Positions 8,743 to 13,384 of a stretch of DNA of 13,384 nucleotides are shown here, in pieces. The notes under the pieces are model-generated. The model did no database searches and was not told the DNA's origin. It saw only the letters and a program-made list of their open reading frames with translations. The stretch lies in the sequence record MK327931.1; one strand, given 5' to 3'. A program made the translations under genes and the position numbers. The first letter of the stretch is position 1, and each line of letters opens with the position of its first letter.

Positions 8743-8948
8743 ATTTTACTCTTAATATCTTCTATTAAAAATCGAATCCATTCTTCAACATAATCTTCCT
8801 GATGGTTTGTGTTCAGTACAGCCAACATGCGGATCTCTGCTCTTGCAACTTCAATTTCAGTTTTAGGCAGGTCTTTGCTGATATCCACCATTAAGTCCAT
8901 GTATTTCAAGATAAGACCGTATGATTGGGTTCGTGTTATAGTTTTCAT
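8739..8948 (-). CDS. Family A paralog A3 (G>N variant)
   Basis: VLNTNHQEDYVEEWIRFL. Confidence 0.9.
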   Translation of the reverse strand: MKTITRTQSYGLILKYMDLMVDISKDLPKTEIEVARAEIRMLAVLNTNHQEDYVEEWIRFLIEDIKSKI

Positions 8949-9145
8949 TGTTTCCTCGTGGACAATATTTTATTTTTCAATGTATCCATATATTGCCACA
9001 CCCATCTACCCTGATAGTTTGTTCCCAATGTAATCAAAAGGTATAACTCCATTCGTTCTACGTGTGTGTCTGTGTTGTAAATCTTTACGTAGTTTTTACG
9101 TAACAGTGATTGATATTCTTCTTTATTTAAAATACGCATTTTCAT
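8945..9145 (-). CDS. Family A paralog A2
   Basis: TLGTNYQGRWVWQYMDTL. Confidence 0.9.
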   Translation of the reverse strand: MKMRILNKEEYQSLLRKNYVKIYNTDTHVERMELYLLITLGTNYQGRWVWQYMDTLKNKILSTRKQ

Positions 9146-9339
9146 AGTTTACTCGTTATATCTTCAATTAAATACCAAATCCAATCGTTGACATACCTTT
9201 CCTGAAAGTTAGTTCCAATGAATAGTGCCATAATTAATTCACGCTTATAGGCAATACCACGGTCATGGGACTTATACATTATCATAGCCATGTTATTGAT
9301 AAGTCTTTCGTGGTGCTGTTCTTTAGTTAAAATACGCAT
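9142..9339 (-). CDS. Family A paralog A1 (first gene of the array)
   Basis: FIGTNFQERYVNDWIWYL. Start moved to MRILTKEQ (9339; GGGAG upstream; the track start abuts the -10 box). Confidence 0.9.
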   Translation of the reverse strand: MRILTKEQHHERLINNMAMIMYKSHDRGIAYKRELIMALFIGTNFQERYVNDWIWYLIEDITSKL

Positions 9340-9369
9340 AGGGACTCCCTTAAAATTAATATCAATCAT

Positions 9370-9397
9370 ATTTTATACGATTCATATAAAAAGTCAA
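9370..9397 (-). promoter_or_regulatory. Predicted promoter of the family A operon
   Basis: TTGACT-16 nt-TAAAAT, 30 nt upstream of the A1 start. Confidence 0.65.
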
Positions 9398-9494
9398 TAA
9401 CATTTTATTCGTAATACCCCTTTATCGAAGTCGCTAAGGTTACCCGCCCTTTAGCCCCCTACGCATTTTGCCATAGTCCAATCCCTTTTATTTC

Positions 9495-9560
9495 AAAAAA
9501 GTCAAGGGATTACCTATGCATTTTTTTAACGCATAATTTTAAAAACGCCTTGACTTTTTT
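9495..9560. terminator. Long inverted repeat, possible bidirectional terminator
   Basis: AAAAAAGTCAAGG (9495-9507) and CCTTGACTTTTTT (9548-9560) form a perfect 13 bp inverted repeat ending in a T-tract on both strands, enclosing a second 8 bp stem (9515-9535). Confidence 0.5.
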
Positions 9561-9588
9561 CTGAATCAGTACTAGATCCCTTTACGCA

Positions 9589-9798
9589 TTAATCCTTCGT
9601 TACGCTAACGATTATCTGTGTATCCCCGTAGTCCTGCCATACTTCCACGCCATCGGTCGCCCTGGTTAGTCGTGCTGTCATCTGCTTAATGGTCTTAGGC
9701 TTTAGTGGAACCTGTTGCAGTACTGTACGCATAGCATCATTGACGTTATCATGTACGCCTGCAATAGTACCTAGAACGCTGTATACTGTATAGAACAT
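9589..9798 (-). CDS. Hypothetical protein (69 aa)
   Basis: ORF track; AGGAGG 8 nt upstream. Confidence 0.85.
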   Translation of the reverse strand: MFYTVYSVLGTIAGVHDNVNDAMRTVLQQVPLKPKTIKQMTARLTRATDGVEVWQDYGDTQIIVSVTKD

Positions 9799-9822
9799 AT
9801 GTATGCCCTCCTGATATAGTTA

Positions 9823-9842
9823 AGGCCGCTACAAGGCGGCCT
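9823..9842 (-). promoter_or_regulatory. Leader/intergenic hairpin
   Basis: AGGCCGC-6 nt-GCGGCCT, a perfect 7 bp stem just upstream of the RBS. Confidence 0.6.
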
Positions 9843-9866
9843 ATGATGTTTGGTGATGTGTAACGC

Positions 9867-10268
9867 TTACAGTCCTAAGATAGTGCGTGCTTCGTTACGT
9901 TCCGTACACAGCTGCATGATGTGAGCAAGTAAGTCCTTGCTAATGTATCCGGTGTTCATAGCTTCACGAATAGATACATCATACGCACCGAACCCCGTGC
10001 GAACGATACGCACATCATTCAGGTTAGTATTATAGATACCGCCGAGATCAACGGCTTCGAATACTACATCAACAGAATATTCATTGTTGCCATCGTGGAA
10101 GTTTTCCAGTGCAATAGTATTGGATACCGCCCAACGTTTGCAGTTTCCAATGATGCGGCACTGTTCCGGTTGGATAGTACCATTACTTACAGCGTACTCC
10201 AGTGCATCTTTACCAAAAGTCCGAGCCAGTACTAAAACGTCAGCGAAGGAATTGATTGAGAAGGTCAT
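9867..10268 (-). CDS. Hypothetical protein (133 aa)
   Basis: Start moved to MTFSINS (10268; AAGGAG upstream). The track extension runs through the leader hairpin. Confidence 0.85.
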   Translation of the reverse strand: MTFSINSFADVLVLARTFGKDALEYAVSNGTIQPEQCRIIGNCKRWAVSNTIALENFHDGNNEYSVDVVFEAVDLGGIYNTNLNDVRIVRTGFGAYDVSIREAMNTGYISKDLLAHIMQLCTERNEARTILGL

Positions 10269-10288
10269 GATAAAACTCCTTAATTTAG

Positions 10289-10350
10289 GAGGGAGAACCA
10301 TTTCCCCCTCTCTATGTAAAACATTATACTTGATTCTAAGTACTATGCAA
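10289..10350 (-). promoter_or_regulatory. Cassette module: promoter plus leader hairpin
   Basis: TTGCAT-16-TATAAT (10350-10323), then hairpin GAGGGGGAA-ATGG-TTCTCCCTC (10310-10289). Confidence 0.85.
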
Positions 10351-10357
10351 GTACTTT

Positions 10358-10690
10358 TTACATTTTAATACCTGGATTCAGGTAGCGGTGAGATCCATAT
10401 TCTGGATCGGTTTCGGTCCAGTACTGTAAATCGATAGTACCTTTCGCGTTAATCTTGTCTACCAGCTTATTCATCTTAGTGTATACTACGTCAGCATCGA
10501 TGCGTTTAAAGCCAGTAGCTTTAGTGAAGTAGTAGTGATTTGCTTCACTATCATTAAGGATATACCGAGCACCGTTTGCAGTCTGTGCGATAATGATTGA
10601 GTATTCTACTTCCCGATCCAGACCGTCGATGAATACAGATGAAACATTGGTACGGATGAAAGCTTTAACGATAGCGATTGAAGTACTCAT
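10358..10690 (-). CDS. Hypothetical protein (110 aa)
   Basis: ORF track; AGGAG RBS; C-terminal IDLQYWTETDPEYGS motif. Confidence 0.85.
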   Translation of the reverse strand: MSTSIAIVKAFIRTNVSSVFIDGLDREVEYSIIIAQTANGARYILNDSEANHYYFTKATGFKRIDADVVYTKMNKLVDKINAKGTIDLQYWTETDPEYGSHRYLNPGIKM

Positions 10691-10710
10691 TTTGAATCTC
10701 CTAACTTTGT

Positions 10711-10772
10711 GGGCCGTCGCACCATTGCCGCCCTACGAGATACATTATTGCAGTACTGATATACTTTGTCAA
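10711..10772 (-). promoter_or_regulatory. Cassette module, variant
   Basis: TTGACA-17-AATAAT; the upstream half is identical to the 12723 and 13217 copies; imperfect hairpin GGGCGGCA-ATGG-TGCGACGGCCC. Confidence 0.7.
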
Positions 10773-10885
10773 TACTTTTTTTATTAATAGTTTTCACCCC
10801 ACCAGCAGATAGTTACTCACCGTTATTAACTATATATTTTAGATACACTCCTGCACCCAGTGGGCTAGTTTTTGTCTATGCGTAT

Positions 10886-10914
10886 ATAATAGCAAAGGGA
10901 CTGACCGGAGTCAA
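10886..10914 (-). promoter_or_regulatory. Orphan sigma70-type promoter
   Basis: TTGACT-17-TATTAT with a TG extended -10, overlapping a terminator-like hairpin. Confidence 0.6.
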
Positions 10915-10925
10915 TCCCTTTTTTT
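10894..10925. terminator. Intrinsic terminator-like hairpin
   Basis: Minus strand: GGGAUUGAC-UCCG-GUCAGUCCC (UNCG-type tetraloop) followed by UUU; plus strand followed by T7. Lies 12 nt after the stop of 10937..11137. Confidence 0.7.
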
Positions 10926-10936
10926 ATTCTTTTTTG

Positions 10937-11137
10937 TTAGATGATTCTCCAATCTTCTACGATCATGGTAAGATAACGGACCATCGATTCAAGTGATTCG
11001 AATTCCCGATAGTCTGCCGCTCCACCAGCGGTACAAGTACAGCCGATTAAACCATTTTGTAATTCCTTAATCTGTACATCGATAAGGTTGGCTTTAGCTT
11101 CTTTCAGTACTTCAACCAGGGCGATAGCGATAGACAT
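10937..11137 (-). CDS. Hypothetical protein (66 aa)
   Basis: ORF track; GGAG RBS; has its own promoter module. Confidence 0.85.
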   Translation of the reverse strand: MSIAIALVEVLKEAKANLIDVQIKELQNGLIGCTCTAGGAADYREFESLESMVRYLTMIVEDWRII

Positions 11138-11160
11138 AATGTTTTACTCCAAACTATTGA

Positions 11161-11220
11161 CGGGAGAACTATTCCCCCGCTCTATGTAAAACATTATACA
11201 TTACTGGTTAGTACTGTCAA
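11161..11220 (-). promoter_or_regulatory. Cassette module: promoter plus leader hairpin
   Basis: TTGACA-16-TATAAT (11220-11193); hairpin CGGGGGAA-TAG-TTCTCCCG. 11161-11199 is identical to 12136-12174. Confidence 0.9.
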
Positions 11221-11226
11221 ATAGTT

Positions 11227-11484
11227 TTATGAAATATCTTCGATGTAGTCGGCCCATTTCATTTTTTCAGTACTGTCAATGGCTACCGGATTATTTGGAT
11301 CAAACCATTCACCATTCCCGCAATACATACCCACGGCAACGGTTTTATATCCATCCTGTGCAGTACTCCACGACATAGCACGATAGATATGGCCTTTAAC
11401 TGGTTGCAATACTGGTAATGTTTTATGGTCTTCTACGTAGGCCATAGCTTGAGGATTTACCCGATATTGTGTGAACTGTTCCAT
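11227..11484 (-). CDS. Hypothetical protein (85 aa)
   Basis: ORF track; AAGGGG RBS. Confidence 0.85.
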   Translation of the reverse strand: MEQFTQYRVNPQAMAYVEDHKTLPVLQPVKGHIYRAMSWSTAQDGYKTVAVGMYCGNGEWFDPNNPVAIDSTEKMKWADYIEDIS

Positions 11485-11512
11485 TATGTTTCCCCTTGTA
11501 GTTAGTAAAGTT

Positions 11513-11541
11513 ATTACATCAGTACTATCAAGCTATGTCAA
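11513..11541 (-). promoter_or_regulatory. Promoter without a leader hairpin
   Basis: TTGACA-17-TGTAAT; AGTACT both in the spacer and upstream of the -35. Confidence 0.65.
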
Positions 11542-11560
11542 TAGTACTGAAATAAAACTT

Positions 11561-11785
11561 TTAGATTAGATTATTGATGCCGTTGATGGTAGACTCGCTT
11601 TCTTCTTTCTCCCATTGGCGGTAGTACTTCCATGCTTCATGATATGTGGCGATTAGTTCATCTTTTTGATCCTGAGTACATGCCAGTACTGAATCACGGT
11701 GAGCGGTTTTATAGATAGAATCGAATGATTTCTTCTCTTCTGCCAGGTTAGCTACTTCCCGCATCAGTTCATCAAAGTTAGCCAT
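11561..11785 (-). CDS. Hypothetical helical protein (74 aa)
   Basis: ORF track; AAGGAG RBS. Confidence 0.85.
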   Translation of the reverse strand: MANFDELMREVANLAEEKKSFDSIYKTAHRDSVLACTQDQKDELIATYHEAWKYYRQWEKEESESTINGINNLI

Positions 11786-11803
11786 TTTATTACTCCTTTT
11801 AGT

Positions 11804-11860
11804 GGGGGAGGATATCTCCCCCTATGCAAAACATTATACTTTGTTTTAGTTATTATGCAA
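11804..11860 (-). promoter_or_regulatory. Cassette module: promoter plus leader hairpin
   Basis: TTGCAT-16-TATAAT (11860-11833); hairpin GGGGGAG-ATATC-CTCCCCC. Confidence 0.85.
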
Positions 11861-12116
11861 GTACTTTTTTCATATAAAGATTATATTCTACACCGCCGTA
11901 ACCTTCTACGATGATATGTTTTGCGTTATCACGTTTGCACATAGTGAAACCGTTGTTGATGTGTTCTGCATTTTCCAGGGCGACATCACCGATAGCGGCA
12001 CATACGGCACTAATAACAGTATTCCGCAAAGTACTGGTATCATTAGCGGTCATAGTAGTTTGCAGTACTACGTTGTCGTATACGTGTGCATTGATAGTGA
12101 TTTCGATAGTGTTCAT
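11853..12116 (-). CDS. Hypothetical protein (87 aa)
   Basis: ORF track; AGGAG RBS; its last codons overlap the next promoter. Confidence 0.85.
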   Translation of the reverse strand: MNTIEITINAHVYDNVVLQTTMTANDTSTLRNTVISAVCAAIGDVALENAEHINNGFTMCKRDNAKHIIVEGYGGVEYNLYMKKVLA

Positions 12117-12134
12117 GGTGTATCTCCTGGACTG

Positions 12135-12195
12135 GCGGGAGAACTATTCCCCCGCTCTATGTAAAACATTATACGTTAATCTAACTACAATGCAA
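12135..12195 (-). promoter_or_regulatory. Cassette module: promoter plus leader hairpin
   Basis: TTGCAT-16-TATAAT (12195-12168); hairpin GCGGGGGAA-TAG-TTCTCCCGC. Confidence 0.9.
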
Positions 12196-12202
12196 GTACT
12201 TT

Positions 12203-12394
12203 TTAAATTTTATTTCCGATATAGTCCGGTCTATTCTTTTCGGTCATACGCTTTGCTAATGTTTGCATATGGCTTATTGCGTTTAATGTGTCTTCCTCCA
12301 GGGATGAATCAACATAATCAGGATCATTCTTCACCTTGCAATGATTATGATAGCGTAGTACTGCCAGTACTTTTTTAACTTCTTCTACTGTCAT
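12203..12394 (-). CDS. Hypothetical protein (63 aa)
   Basis: ORF track; ATGA-coupled to 12391..12663. Confidence 0.8.
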   Translation of the reverse strand: MTVEEVKKVLAVLRYHNHCKVKNDPDYVDSSLEEDTLNAISHMQTLAKRMTEKNRPDYIGNKI

Positions 12395-12663
12395 AATAAG
12401 TACCCCACTTCGTTAGCTTTCAGGTTAGTATCAATCATCAGTGGATTTTTGTAGTTCACAAAACGATTAGTTTTCTCGATAGCGAATCCCATATAATCCA
12501 GCTTACTAACAGTACATTCATTCTTAAAAACTTCTTTCGCTGCATCGATGGCTGATTGCATGGATAACCGACCATCTAAATTAATGTTTCCAAATGATCC
12601 ACCAGCAGAAGTAGGATTACCGTTCATATCTTTAATGATCATAGTAGCGGAGTAGCTGGACAT
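12391..12663 (-). CDS. Hypothetical protein (90 aa)
   Basis: ORF track; AAGGA RBS; has its own promoter module. Confidence 0.85.
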   Translation of the reverse strand: MSSYSATMIIKDMNGNPTSAGGSFGNINLDGRLSMQSAIDAAKEVFKNECTVSKLDYMGFAIEKTNRFVNYKNPLMIDTNLKANEVGYLL

Positions 12664-12685
12664 AATTTTGTTTCCTTTTAGTATC

Positions 12686-12744
12686 GGGGAGAACTATTCT
12701 CCCCTTGATGTAAACTATTATACAGTACTGATATACTTTGTCAA
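12686..12744 (-). repeat. 59 bp direct repeat, copy 1 (promoter plus hairpin module)
   Basis: Identical to 13180-13238; TTGACA-16-TATAAT followed by GGGGAGAA-TAG-TTCTCCCC. Confidence 0.95.
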
Positions 12745-12750
12745 ATACTT

Positions 12751-13158
12751 TTATTCGCCCATATAGATTAAGTTATCATCGCCTACATAGGGATCGCAAA
12801 CGTTGATTTCTTCGCAGTACTTCGTGAATACATCGCCATAGTGACCTAAACCACGATCCCAAAAACCAGTTCCGTGACCTTCGCGGGTAAGGAACAGATC
12901 ATGACCAGCTTGCTCATAACCGTAATCAATAAACATACCGCGAACTACTTCCAGATCATTACCGTGTTTCTCAATGAAGCGAGAACATGCAATCACCGCC
13001 GCTTGACGTGCTTCATCAGATAACTCATAATCTTCCAGGTAATCGCCGTTATCATTATGTACAGTACTGAATTGCATAGCTTCAATGTAAGCTACAACCA
13101 TTGCAGCATGATTTTTATCGTTAGTGATGTTCCGAGCGAGATTAGTAGTAGTAGACAT
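12751..13158 (-). CDS. Acidic hypothetical protein (135 aa) with a GHDxxLTRxGHGxGFWDR motif
   Basis: ORF track; AAGGA RBS; has its own promoter module. Confidence 0.9.
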   Translation of the reverse strand: MSTTTNLARNITNDKNHAAMVVAYIEAMQFSTVHNDNGDYLEDYELSDEARQAAVIACSRFIEKHGNDLEVVRGMFIDYGYEQAGHDLFLTREGHGTGFWDRGLGHYGDVFTKYCEEINVCDPYVGDDNLIYMGE

Positions 13159-13179
13159 GATTTTATTCCTTATTGTATT

Positions 13180-13238
13180 GGGGAGAACTATTCTCCCCTT
13201 GATGTAAACTATTATACAGTACTGATATACTTTGTCAA
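13180..13238 (-). repeat. 59 bp direct repeat, copy 2 (promoter plus hairpin module)
   Basis: Identical to 12686-12744. Confidence 0.95.
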
Positions 13239-13241
13239 TAC

Positions 13242-13384
13242 TTAATTACGTTTAAAATGATATGTGCCTTTATCATCCTGTACGCCCCACACTGATTTAC
13301 CATCAACACCAGTGAAACCGGATTGTAATTCAATATGGAAACCATTATTATCAACTACAAAAACTTTTTTATTTTCATCCCGAT
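13242..13384 (-). CDS. 3' end of a hypothetical protein that starts outside the window (...GFTGVDGKSVWGVQDDKGTYHFKRN)
   Basis: Manual translation: 46 open codons ending in TAA at 13244-13242, directly before the next -35 box, the same layout as the other cassettes. Confidence 0.7.
   Translation of the reverse strand, partial: RDENKKVFVVDNNGFHIELQSGFTGVDGKSVWGVQDDKGTYHFKRN

What the first reader, a model, noticed from the sequence alone, without database searches (positions are those of the whole stretch)
10289..13198. Conserved 5'-leader RNA hairpin with compensatory changes and a recurring loop sequence
Seen: seven modules carry a GC-rich stem a few nt after the predicted TSS (10289-10310, 10711-10733, 11161-11179, 11804-11822, 12135-12155, 12686-12704, 13180-13198). 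Stem ends co-vary (GA/TC, C/G, GC/GC, G/C). Three copies have a G-T mismatch that pairs as G.U only on the transcribed strand. The apex is AATRGT in six of seven, even in the 10711 copy whose stem is unrelated. There is no U-tract, so it is not an intrinsic terminator, and the RBS lies outside the stem. Inference: an RNA element, either a 5' stabiliser against RNase E/RppH or a protein-binding site (antitermination, translational control or timed cleavage) that tags this transcript class.
Basis: partly seen in the sequence, partly recalled or inferred. Interest (0 to 1): 0.68.

Follow-up and report, generated by a model that had tools for sequence, protein, structure and literature searches.

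The report
Early-promoter leader hairpin, jumbo phage repeat
A short GC-rich RNA hairpin sits just after about 25 strong early promoters in the terminal repeat of a giant E. coli phage and is kept by compensating mutations, so it is a real, uncatalogued leader element whose job (probably to protect or insulate early messages) has not been tested.

Summary
The window is Escherichia phage Sharanji/G17 (Asteriusvirus, a RaK2-like jumbo phage). It spans the junction between unique DNA and the roughly 20.7-kb direct terminal repeat (DTR), which starts at window 9437.

**Observation.** Each starts 10-12 nt after a consensus sigma-70 -10 box and ends 18-22 nt before the start codon. The Shine-Dalgarno site is left unpaired and no U-tract follows. 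The 10711 copy is weak and is not a family member.

**Extent.** A covariance model finds 21-25 copies per genome. All are on one strand and all lie inside the DTR, so they appear twice in records that hold both repeats.

**Relatives.** The same layout, with different stem sequences, occurs in RaK2, Salmonella phage 7t3, an rV5-like phage and a phi92-like phage.

**Structure evidence.**
- In 73 distinct copies, 98.4% of cells pair and all 8 pairs show double changes.
- Mismatches are almost all G·T on the transcribed strand.
- The loop varies: more than 20 forms, including TAG inverted to CTA.

**Reading.** This is an RNA-level hairpin, not an operator or an intrinsic terminator. Its function is untested. 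My best guess is that it protects or insulates early mRNAs, within a promoter cassette that also marks gene-cassette indel boundaries, as PeSLs do in T4-like phages. It is a new variant of a known kind.

The parts
10289..10310 (-). Leader hairpin, stem GAGGGGGAA / TTCTCCCTC, loop ATGG, one internal G·U
   Evidence: model R1 hit at 52.4 bits
11160..11180 (-). Leader hairpin, stem GCGGGGGAA / TTCTCCCGT, loop TAG, internal and terminal G·U
   Evidence: R1 hit
11804..11822 (-). Leader hairpin, stem GGGGGAG / CTCCCCC, loop ATATC, shorter 10-nt leader
   Evidence: weak R1 hit (E 0.18), stronger with R2
12135..12155 (-). Leader hairpin, stem GCGGGGGAA / TTCTCCCGC, loop TAG, internal G·U
   Evidence: R1 hit
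12686..12704 (-). Leader hairpin, stem GGGGAGAA / TTCTCCCC, loop TAG
   Evidence: R1 hit
13180..13198 (-). Leader hairpin, stem GGGGAGAA / TTCTCCCC, loop TAG. It lies in a module that shares a 59-letter overlap with the 12686 module.
   Evidence: joint 12685->13180 in metagenome contigs
10711..10733 (-). Doubtful or degenerate copy: interrupted 4-6 bp stem after an AATAAT -10. Not a family member.
   Evidence: z -0.65; MFE pairs leader with the SD; absent from the matches listed by the models
10323..10350 (-). Sigma-70 promoter of the 10289 module (TTGCAT, 16-nt spacer, TATAAT); presumed +1 at 10315
11193..11220 (-). Sigma-70 promoter, 12/12 match to consensus; presumed +1 at 11185
11833..11860 (-). 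Sigma-70 promoter (TTGCAT, 16-nt spacer, TATAAT); presumed +1 at 11825
12168..12195 (-). Sigma-70 promoter (TTGCAT, 16-nt spacer, TATAAT); presumed +1 at 12160
12717..12744 (-). Sigma-70 promoter, 12/12 match to consensus; presumed +1 at 12709
13211..13238 (-). Sigma-70 promoter, 12/12 match to consensus; presumed +1 at 13203
9437..13384 (.). Part of the window inside the direct terminal repeat. All hairpin modules of the genome lie in this repeat.
   Evidence: PMC13070987

Best explanation
**What it is.** The element is an RNA stem-loop (7-9 bp, G-rich 5' arm, C-rich 3' arm, 3-5 nt loop, about -12 kcal/mol). It is transcribed as the first structured part of the 5' leader of the sigma-70-dependent (host RNA polymerase, hence presumably early) mRNAs of the direct terminal repeat.

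**The cassette.** The hairpin belongs to a repeated, self-contained unit: an upstream A-tract and AGTACT box, the -35 and -10, a conserved CAT start region, the hairpin, an AU-rich spacer, the Shine-Dalgarno site, and then one ORFan gene.

**Shown here:**
- The hairpin exists.
- Pairing, not sequence, is what is conserved.
- Pairing is better on the transcribed strand.
- The RBS stays free.
- The element is confined to the terminal repeat.
- Cassette copies coincide with gene insertion/deletion breakpoints.

**Inferred function.** The hairpin acts after transcription to raise and standardise expression of these short early messages, in three possible ways:
- It shields the 5' end region.
- With the ribosome bound 16-22 nt downstream, it leaves almost no naked single-stranded leader.
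- In read-through transcripts from the promoter upstream, it gives the preceding cistron a 3' hairpin that blocks exonucleases.

As a repeated 60-100 bp unit, the cassette also provides homology for recombination that shuffles the ORFans.
For: **Identity and location**
- The window is 100% identical to Sharanji and G17.
- Model R1 finds 21 hits at E<1e-3 in Sharanji, all on the minus strand between 16.6 and 34.8 kb and none elsewhere in 350 kb.
- In fEgEco12 and G17 every hit occurs twice, once in each terminal repeat, at constant offsets of 353,740 and 350,149.
- The repeat starts at window 9437.

**Structure**
- The hairpin is the MFE and centroid structure in six leaders, with the SD free.
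- Over 82 distinct modules, mean dG is -13.4 +/- 1.7 kcal/mol, and the distance from hairpin to start codon is 16-22 nt in 73 of 80.

**Covariation**
- 98.4% of 570 cells pair.
- 8 of 8 pairs carry double changes.
- 60 double-change cells, against 10 +/- 5 in shuffles (0 of 500 shuffles reach the observed value).
- Slid controls score at most 0.10, against 0.42 observed.

**Strand asymmetry**
- 49 G·T cells against 5 A·C cells.
- In 42 unique hairpins, all 8 internal mismatches are G·T.

**Same position, different stems in other lineages**
- RaK2: GGGGATACA/TGTATCCC and GGGAATGAA/TTCATTCCC. Also present in 7t3, the rV5-like ZYD and the phi92-like FBKp34.
- In each, hits cluster in one early region on one strand.

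**Cassette boundaries**
- The gene at window 12751-13158 is absent in SP27, and the join lies inside the flanking modules.
- A roughly 0.9-kb replacement is bounded by a hairpin and a promoter.
- The same joints appear in wastewater contigs.
Against: - No transcription start, RNA end or half-life has been measured. The RNA runs were available only as contigs, which cannot show ends.
- With +1 at the conserved CAT, the unpaired 5' tail is 1-6 nt, with a mode of 5. From my own recollection of the ompA work, unverified here, that is at or beyond the limit for classical 5'-terminal protection.
- RNase E is reported to bypass simple stem-loops while scanning (PMC9943677).
- About a quarter to a third of sister promoters in the same repeat (about 9 against 23), and all those sampled in GAP32, lack the hairpin. 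It is therefore not essential for this promoter class.
- The constant G-rich-5' / C-rich-3' polarity, and the semi-conserved GAA...UUC top of the stem, are not explained by a purely structural role.
- The covariation counts come from an alignment fitted to the model, and many rows are paralogues or orthologues, so events are fewer than cells.
Confidence: 0.42

Rival explanations
1. The hairpin is a recognition tag for an RNA-binding protein, either a phage early or middle product or a host factor. That protein would time the fate of terminal-repeat transcripts as a class, through shut-off by cleavage or translational repression, or through antitermination in the manner of lambda N with boxB.
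For: - The element is confined to one transcript class.
- It has constant purine-5' / pyrimidine-3' polarity and a semi-conserved GGGRAA...UUYCCC core across four lineages.
- A bare stem-loop is a poor obstacle for RNase E, whereas a bound protein is a good one (PMC9943677).
- The neighbouring genes are dozens of ORFans of unknown function.
Against: - The loop, the usual specificity determinant, has more than 20 variants of 3-5 nt, up to 15 nt, and is inverted in one orthologue.
- Stem sequences in RaK2 are quite different.
- There is no RegB homologue, although that search's controls also found nothing.
- No candidate protein was identified.
Confidence: 0.2
2. The hairpin acts during transcription. 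It would be a pause or attenuation signal for polymerases arriving from upstream promoters (the role proposed for PeSL stem-loops in T4-like phages), or a hairpin-stabilised pause near the RBS that couples transcription to translation.
For: - The cassette architecture and G-run/C-run stems resemble PeSLs, whose stem-loop reduced lacZ expression like a strong terminator (PMC2839356).
- Some annotators called hairpins upstream of genes in related phages terminators or stem-loops. This was checked directly only for FBKp34 (module confirmed); GAP32 annotations are similar.
- There are no terminators between most modules, so read-through must occur.
Against: - No U-tract follows the stem in any lineage.
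- The hairpin lies inside its own gene's leader, so efficient termination would silence that gene.
- The region has separate, canonical terminator hairpins, one of them a true promoter/terminator composite at 10886-10921.
Confidence: 0.15
3. The palindrome works as DNA. It would be an operator for a repressor that shuts off early promoters, a cruciform, or mainly a recombination hotspot.
For: - It is centred about +15 to +17, where a bound protein would block promoter clearance.
- Indel joints fall in the modules.
- The TAG-to-CTA loop inversion is a typical palindrome-mediated DNA event.
Against: - Half-site sequence and half-site spacing both vary.
- Mismatches are G·T on one strand only, which is meaningless for duplex DNA.
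- Stems of 7-9 bp are short for cruciform extrusion.
- Recombination needs only the repeat, not a palindrome.
Confidence: 0.08
4. The hairpin has no function of its own. It is a passenger inherited with a promoter cassette that spread by duplication and horizontal transfer.
For: - Copies are paralogous and the leader around the hairpin is also highly conserved.
- Hairpin-less sister promoters exist.
Against: - Pairing is maintained through double changes at every pair, and across lineages with unrelated stem sequences.
- No disruptive internal mismatch was seen in 42 unique hairpins.
Confidence: 0.05

Closest known systems
PeSLs (promoter-early stem-loops) of T4-like phages RB49/phi1, PST, nt-1 (Arbiol 2010, PMC2839356; Comeau 2014, PMC4122927)
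   Same: - A repeated intergenic cassette of roughly 60-100 bp that joins a consensus sigma-70 early promoter, with an AT-rich upstream region, to a G-run/C-run stem-loop and an SD.
- The cassettes flank ORFans in a hyperplastic region.
- Cassette copies coincide with indel boundaries between close relatives.
   Different: - In PeSLs the stem-loop mostly lies between -35 and -10 or over the -10. It therefore precedes the TSS and is read as a terminator for upstream transcription.
- Here it always starts 8-14 nt after the -10, inside the gene's own leader.
- There is no sequence relationship: model R2 finds 0 hits in RB49.
- The host phages are unrelated lineages, and here the cassettes are confined to the terminal repeat.
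5'-terminal stabiliser stem-loops (E. coli ompA leader; phage T7 gene 10 leader). Recalled from my own knowledge, not verified here.
   Same: - A GC-rich hairpin at the start of the 5' UTR.
- Structure rather than sequence is conserved.
- The RBS is left free downstream.
- The T7 gene 10 leader also begins with a GGGAGA-type purine arm.
   Different: - The classical elements need the stem within a few nucleotides of the 5' end.
- Here the predicted tail is 1-6 nt and the TSS has not been mapped.
- No stability data exist.
Lambda nut boxB / N antitermination hairpins. Recalled from my own knowledge.
   Same: A short GC stem-loop transcribed soon after early promoters, marking early transcripts.
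   Different: - boxB has a conserved pentaloop read by N, and an adjacent boxA.
- Here the loop is hypervariable.
- The element occurs at about 25 promoters, with almost no terminators to overcome.
Intercistronic protective hairpins (REP elements; 3' stems left at T7 RNase III sites). Recalled from my own knowledge.
   Same: A stable stem-loop between cistrons of read-through transcripts could block 3' exonucleases and protect the upstream cistron.
   Different: - Those elements sit directly after the upstream stop codon, or are long RNase III substrates.
- This one is fixed relative to the downstream promoter and is only 7-9 bp long.

Membership tests
PeSL cassette | Consensus sigma-70 early promoter with an AT-rich upstream region | tested here: met
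   12/12 or 9/12 matches to TTGACA and TATAAT with a 16-nt spacer, preceded by an A-tract
PeSL cassette | GC-rich stem-loop in the same intergenic cassette, followed by the SD and start codon | tested here: met
PeSL cassette | Stem-loop placed between -35 and -10 or over the -10, the commonest positions given in PMC2839356 | tested here: not met
   The hairpin starts 8-14 nt downstream of the -10 in every module. One separate element at window 10886-10921 does meet this feature.
PeSL cassette | Stem-loop terminates or attenuates upstream transcription | not testable with these tools
   Only the sequence could be read: no U-tract follows the stem
PeSL cassette | Cassettes flank ORFans in a plastic region and mediate indels by recombination | tested here: met
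   All nine flanked proteins lack a known function. Breakpoints against SP27 and fEgEco12 fall in modules, as do the contig joints.
PeSL cassette | Sequence relationship to the RB49 elements | tested here: not met
   Model R2 gives 0 hits in the RB49 genome
5'-terminal stabiliser hairpin | Stem within a few unpaired nucleotides of the transcript's 5' end | tested here: inconclusive
   Predicted tail is 1-6 nt if +1 is the A of the conserved CAT. The TSS is not mapped.
5'-terminal stabiliser hairpin | Lengthens mRNA half-life in an RNase E / RppH-dependent way | not testable with these tools
   No expression or decay data. Published work states that simple stem-loops are bypassed by scanning RNase E.
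Intrinsic terminator | GC hairpin followed directly by a U-tract | tested here: not met
   The terminator scan lists none of the hairpins. The tails are AU-mixed, for example ACUAAUUAAGG.
boxB-type antitermination hairpin | Conserved loop sequence read by a cognate protein | tested here: not met
   More than 20 loop variants in 82 modules; TAG inverted to CTA in an orthologue
DNA operator palindrome | Fixed half-site sequence and fixed spacing | tested here: not met
   Stem sequences and loop lengths vary, and mismatches are strand-specific G·T
Any Rfam family | Match to a curated covariance model | tested here: not met
   No hit at E<=1 on the hairpins; none in neighbouring early DNA

The most novel reading that the evidence does not exclude
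The hairpin is a class tag. A phage-encoded (ORFan) or host protein would bind the GGGRAA...UUYCCC stem of every terminal-repeat transcript. Binding would turn a weak stem-loop into a large obstacle or a cleavage site, giving the phage one switch that stabilises and later shuts off about 25 host-takeover messages at once. The same system would be shared by horizontal transfer among RaK2-like, rV5-like and phi92-like phages.
Probability: 0.18. Interest if true: 0.72.

Novelty: new variant of a known kind. Interest (0 to 1): 0.48.

Why it matters
Terminal repeats of jumbo phages are probably the first DNA to be expressed. They carry dozens of unknown host-takeover or anti-defence genes.

A structured leader shared by about 25 of these genes, kept by compensatory evolution in at least four phage lineages and absent from Rfam, offers three things:
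- A marker for finding this gene class.
- A likely determinant of how strongly and for how long the genes are expressed.
- A compact promoter-leader-RBS part for phage engineering.

It also extends the PeSL idea (regulatory cassettes that drive ORFan shuffling) beyond T4-like phages, with a different placement of the stem-loop that changes what the stem-loop can do.

Tried and rejected
- **Own assembly.** It is not held, so I worked through the identical GenBank records.
- **Rfam.** No match.
- **Plain MAFFT plus RNAalifold.** The stems came out of register and no hairpin was found. A covariance-model alignment was needed.
- **RNA runs.** Only Logan contigs were available, so there are no 5' ends, no strand and no expression level. 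I make no claim of transcription from them.
- **RegB-like nuclease acting on the GGAG in the stem.** No homologue was found, but the control genomes were also silent, so this is weak evidence.
- **Leader peptide starting at an ATG in the loop.** Only 29 of 82 loops can supply an ATG, and the reading frames are inconsistent. Rejected.
- **The loop as a -10-like sigma-dependent pause element (AATAGT).** Rejected, because many loops (CGG, CAC, CTC, ACATC) do not fit.
- **The hairpin as an obstacle to RNase E scanning.** Weakened by PMC9943677.
- **Terminal G·T versus A·C extensions of stems.** The count was ambiguous (19 against 10). Only internal mismatches and the model alignment were used.
- **Literature.** I found no description of this hairpin in papers on Sharanji, fEgEco12, RaK2 or rV5.

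Full report
**Identity and setting**

The window is 100% identical to Escherichia phage Sharanji (OR545507.1, 6342-19725) and to vB_EcoM_G17. Both are Asteriusvirus, jumbo myoviruses of the RaK2-like group. All genes in the window lie on the minus strand.

The window is also identical, with 0 mismatches over 1001 nt, to the junction in G17 between unique DNA and the right copy of the direct terminal repeat. G17 position 1, where its repeat starts, corresponds to window 9437. A terminal repeat of about 21 kb has been shown experimentally for the relative fEgEco12 (PMC13070987).

Left of 9437 the window holds tightly packed, overlapping 70-90 aa ORFs, and only three perfect or near-perfect promoter matches on their strand. 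Right of it, every gene or gene pair has its own intergenic module.

**The observation**

Read on the minus strand, each module has these parts in order:
- An A-tract and an AGTACT box.
- A -35 (TTGACA or TTGCAT), a 16-nt spacer and TATAAT.
- A conserved 10-12 nt leader ending in ACAT(A/C)(G/A)A.
- A 7-9 bp hairpin with a G-rich 5' arm and a C-rich 3' arm.
- An AU-rich spacer, AAGGA or GGAG, and the ATG.

Folding the whole predicted leaders gives the hairpin as both MFE and centroid structure, with z from -1.7 to -3.75. The Shine-Dalgarno site is unpaired and no U-tract follows.

The seventh copy (10711-10733) is different. It has an AATAAT -10 and an interrupted 4-6 bp stem (z -0.65). Its best fold pairs the leader with the SD instead. 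Neither covariance model reported it among its matches.

**How many, and where**

A covariance model built from seven copies (R1) finds 21 hits at E<1e-3 in the 350-kb Sharanji record. All are on the minus strand between 16.6 and 34.8 kb, and there are none elsewhere.

A broader model (R2) finds 50-51 hits in G17 and fEgEco12. Every hit occurs twice, at a constant offset equal to the distance between the two terminal repeats. None lies in the roughly 330 kb of unique DNA. The element is therefore a property of the terminal repeat.

About a quarter to a third of the promoters in the same repeat (roughly 9 against 23 in Sharanji by the count) carry the same leader without a hairpin.

**Relatives**

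The same architecture occurs elsewhere, at the same distance from the -10 but with different stems:
- Klebsiella phage RaK2: GGGGATACA/TGTATCCC, GGGAATGAA/TTCATTCCC, GGGGCAA/TTGCCCC.
- Salmonella phage 7t3: GGGGGAA/TTCCCCC.
- The rV5-like phage ZYD.
- The phi92-like phage FBKp34, where one copy was annotated as a terminator.

Genome-wide, the hits in each of these phages cluster in one region on one strand. Cronobacter phage GAP32 has the promoter class but no hairpins. RB49, the type PeSL phage, has no hits.

**RNA or DNA?**

On the model-based alignment of 92 copies, 73 of them distinct:
- 98.4% of 570 cells form standard pairs.
- All 8 pairs show changes on both sides.
- 60 cells carry double changes, against 10 +/- 5 in shuffles.
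- No shuffle and no slid register comes close.

The alignment is fitted to the structure and the copies are related, so the counts overstate the number of independent events. The cross-lineage stems are independent support.

The intermediates are one-sided: 49 G·T cells against 5 A·C cells. In 42 unique hairpins scanned without a model, the 8 internal mismatches are all G·T on the transcribed strand, with no other type.

Loop length (3-5 nt, rarely up to 15) and stem sequence both vary. A dimeric DNA-binding protein could not tolerate that. These points favour a structure selected in the RNA.

The loop is not conserved. There are more than 20 variants, and one orthologous pair differs by exact inversion of the loop, TAG to CTA.

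**Function**

Nothing here measures function. No TSS, RNA end or half-life is available. The RNA runs that contain the sequence are held only as contigs.

Geometry:
- If +1 is the A of the conserved CAT (the eighth base after the -10), the unpaired 5' tail is 1-6 nt, with a mode of 5.
- The stem ends 16-22 nt before the start codon in 73 of 80 modules.
- An initiating ribosome would therefore cover nearly all the remaining single-stranded leader.

This fits a protective or insulating leader. But the tail is at or beyond the limit I recall for classical 5'-terminal protection, and RNase E is reported to bypass simple stem-loops while scanning (PMC9943677). In read-through transcripts the stem could also protect the upstream cistron from 3' exonucleases.

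I rank the explanations as follows:
- A post-transcriptional protective role: 0.42.
- A protein-recognition tag: 0.20.
- A transcriptional pause or attenuator: 0.15.
- A DNA-level role: 0.08.
- A neutral passenger: 0.05.

**Cassette behaviour**

- Against SP27, the gene at window 12751-13158 is missing and the join lies within the flanking modules, which share a 59-letter overlap in the contig joint.
- Against fEgEco12 and SP27, a roughly 0.9-kb segment is replaced between a hairpin and the next promoter.
- Wastewater contigs show the same joints: 12685->13180, and 10924->11225.

This matches the modular shuffling described for PeSLs (PMC2839356, PMC4122927). The cassettes work like PeSLs in this respect. 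They fail the positional feature, since the stem-loop is downstream rather than upstream of the start, and they have no sequence relationship.

**Verdict**

The RNA-level reading is well supported. The conserved-loop claim and the seventh copy are not. The function remains an inference.

I found no description of the element in Rfam or in the genome papers I could read. I file it as a new variant of a known kind.

Noticed in passing
window 9436|9437: The window straddles the inner edge of the direct terminal repeat. G17 position 1 corresponds to window 9437, and window 8937-9937 is identical to G17 349650-350650, the junction of unique DNA with the right repeat. Gene architecture changes there: overlapping ORFs with few strong promoter matches on the left, one promoter per gene on the right.
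   Followed up: yes
window 10853-10864 (minus strand); also L001 31013, 33242, 35352 (+) and 19941, 23215, 26498, 33299 (-): A second conserved element. An invariant 12-mer, CCCAYNGGGTGC, lies about 20-30 nt after its own sigma-70-like promoter and is followed by a G·U-rich hairpin (GGGUGCR, 4-nt loop, YGUAUCU). Some copies also have an upstream hairpin with apparent compensatory differences. Copy numbers are 9 in Sharanji, 8 in RaK2, 10 in 7t3, 11 in GAP32 and 0 in the rV5-like phage, with 0 for the reversed-pattern control. Copies are on both strands and nearly all in the early region. Plus-strand copies end in an intrinsic terminator, giving sRNA-like units of roughly 100 nt. There is no Rfam match.
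   Followed up: partly
window 10886-10921 (minus strand): A true PeSL-type composite. A terminator-like hairpin (GGGATTGAC tccg GTCAGTCCC) carries the -35 TTGACT in its 5' arm and is followed by TATTAT. On the plus strand the same stem is followed by a long T-run, so it may terminate in both directions. G17's annotation lists ARNold terminators of the same -13.0 kcal/mol score at three further sites in the repeat; I did not compare their sequences.
   Followed up: partly
whole window; L001: AGTACT occurs 43 times in the window against 4.4 expected from base composition, and 209 against 16.7 in 50 kb. In the promoters it sits at fixed places, overlapping the upstream side of the -35 and abutting the -10, in Asteriusvirus, RaK2, 7t3 and GAP32. 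It may be a factor-binding or modification site.
   Followed up: partly
window 11485-11560 (minus strand): A sister promoter with no hairpin (TTGACA, then TGTAAT-like -10) ahead of the gene at 11227-11484. Its leader folds at only -1.8 kcal/mol.
   Followed up: partly
window 10301 (L001 16642); also L001 31342 and 22660: Deposited Sharanji annotations start three genes at an ATG or GTG inside or beside the hairpin loop. An in-frame ATG with a proper SD lies 33 nt downstream (10268), so these starts are probably mis-called.
   Followed up: partly
window 12203-12394: This 63-aa ORFan is shared at 70-85% nucleotide identity with many rV5-like phages of about 136-150 kb. Short stretches of the promoter-hairpin modules themselves (window 12134-12207 and 13152-13247) also match such phages. 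This indicates exchange of cassettes between phage lineages.
   Followed up: no
window 12751-13158: This 135-aa gene is a presence/absence cassette. It is missing in SP27 (shown directly). It may also be the gap in the relatives that cover only 89% of the query, which I did not check. In the wastewater contig the joint shows a 59-letter overlap between the two flanking modules.
   Followed up: yes
L001 19027-19045 versus L004 17723-17741: Orthologous hairpins differ by exact inversion of the loop, TAG to CTA, with identical stems. This is a palindrome-mediated DNA event and shows that loop orientation is not constrained.
   Followed up: yes
L001 23089-23132 and 33077-33122 (outside the window): Two modules carry a long-loop variant (ACGGGGAAC, about 12-15 nt of loop, then TTCCCGT) after the same leader. 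They score weakly with the models.
   Followed up: no
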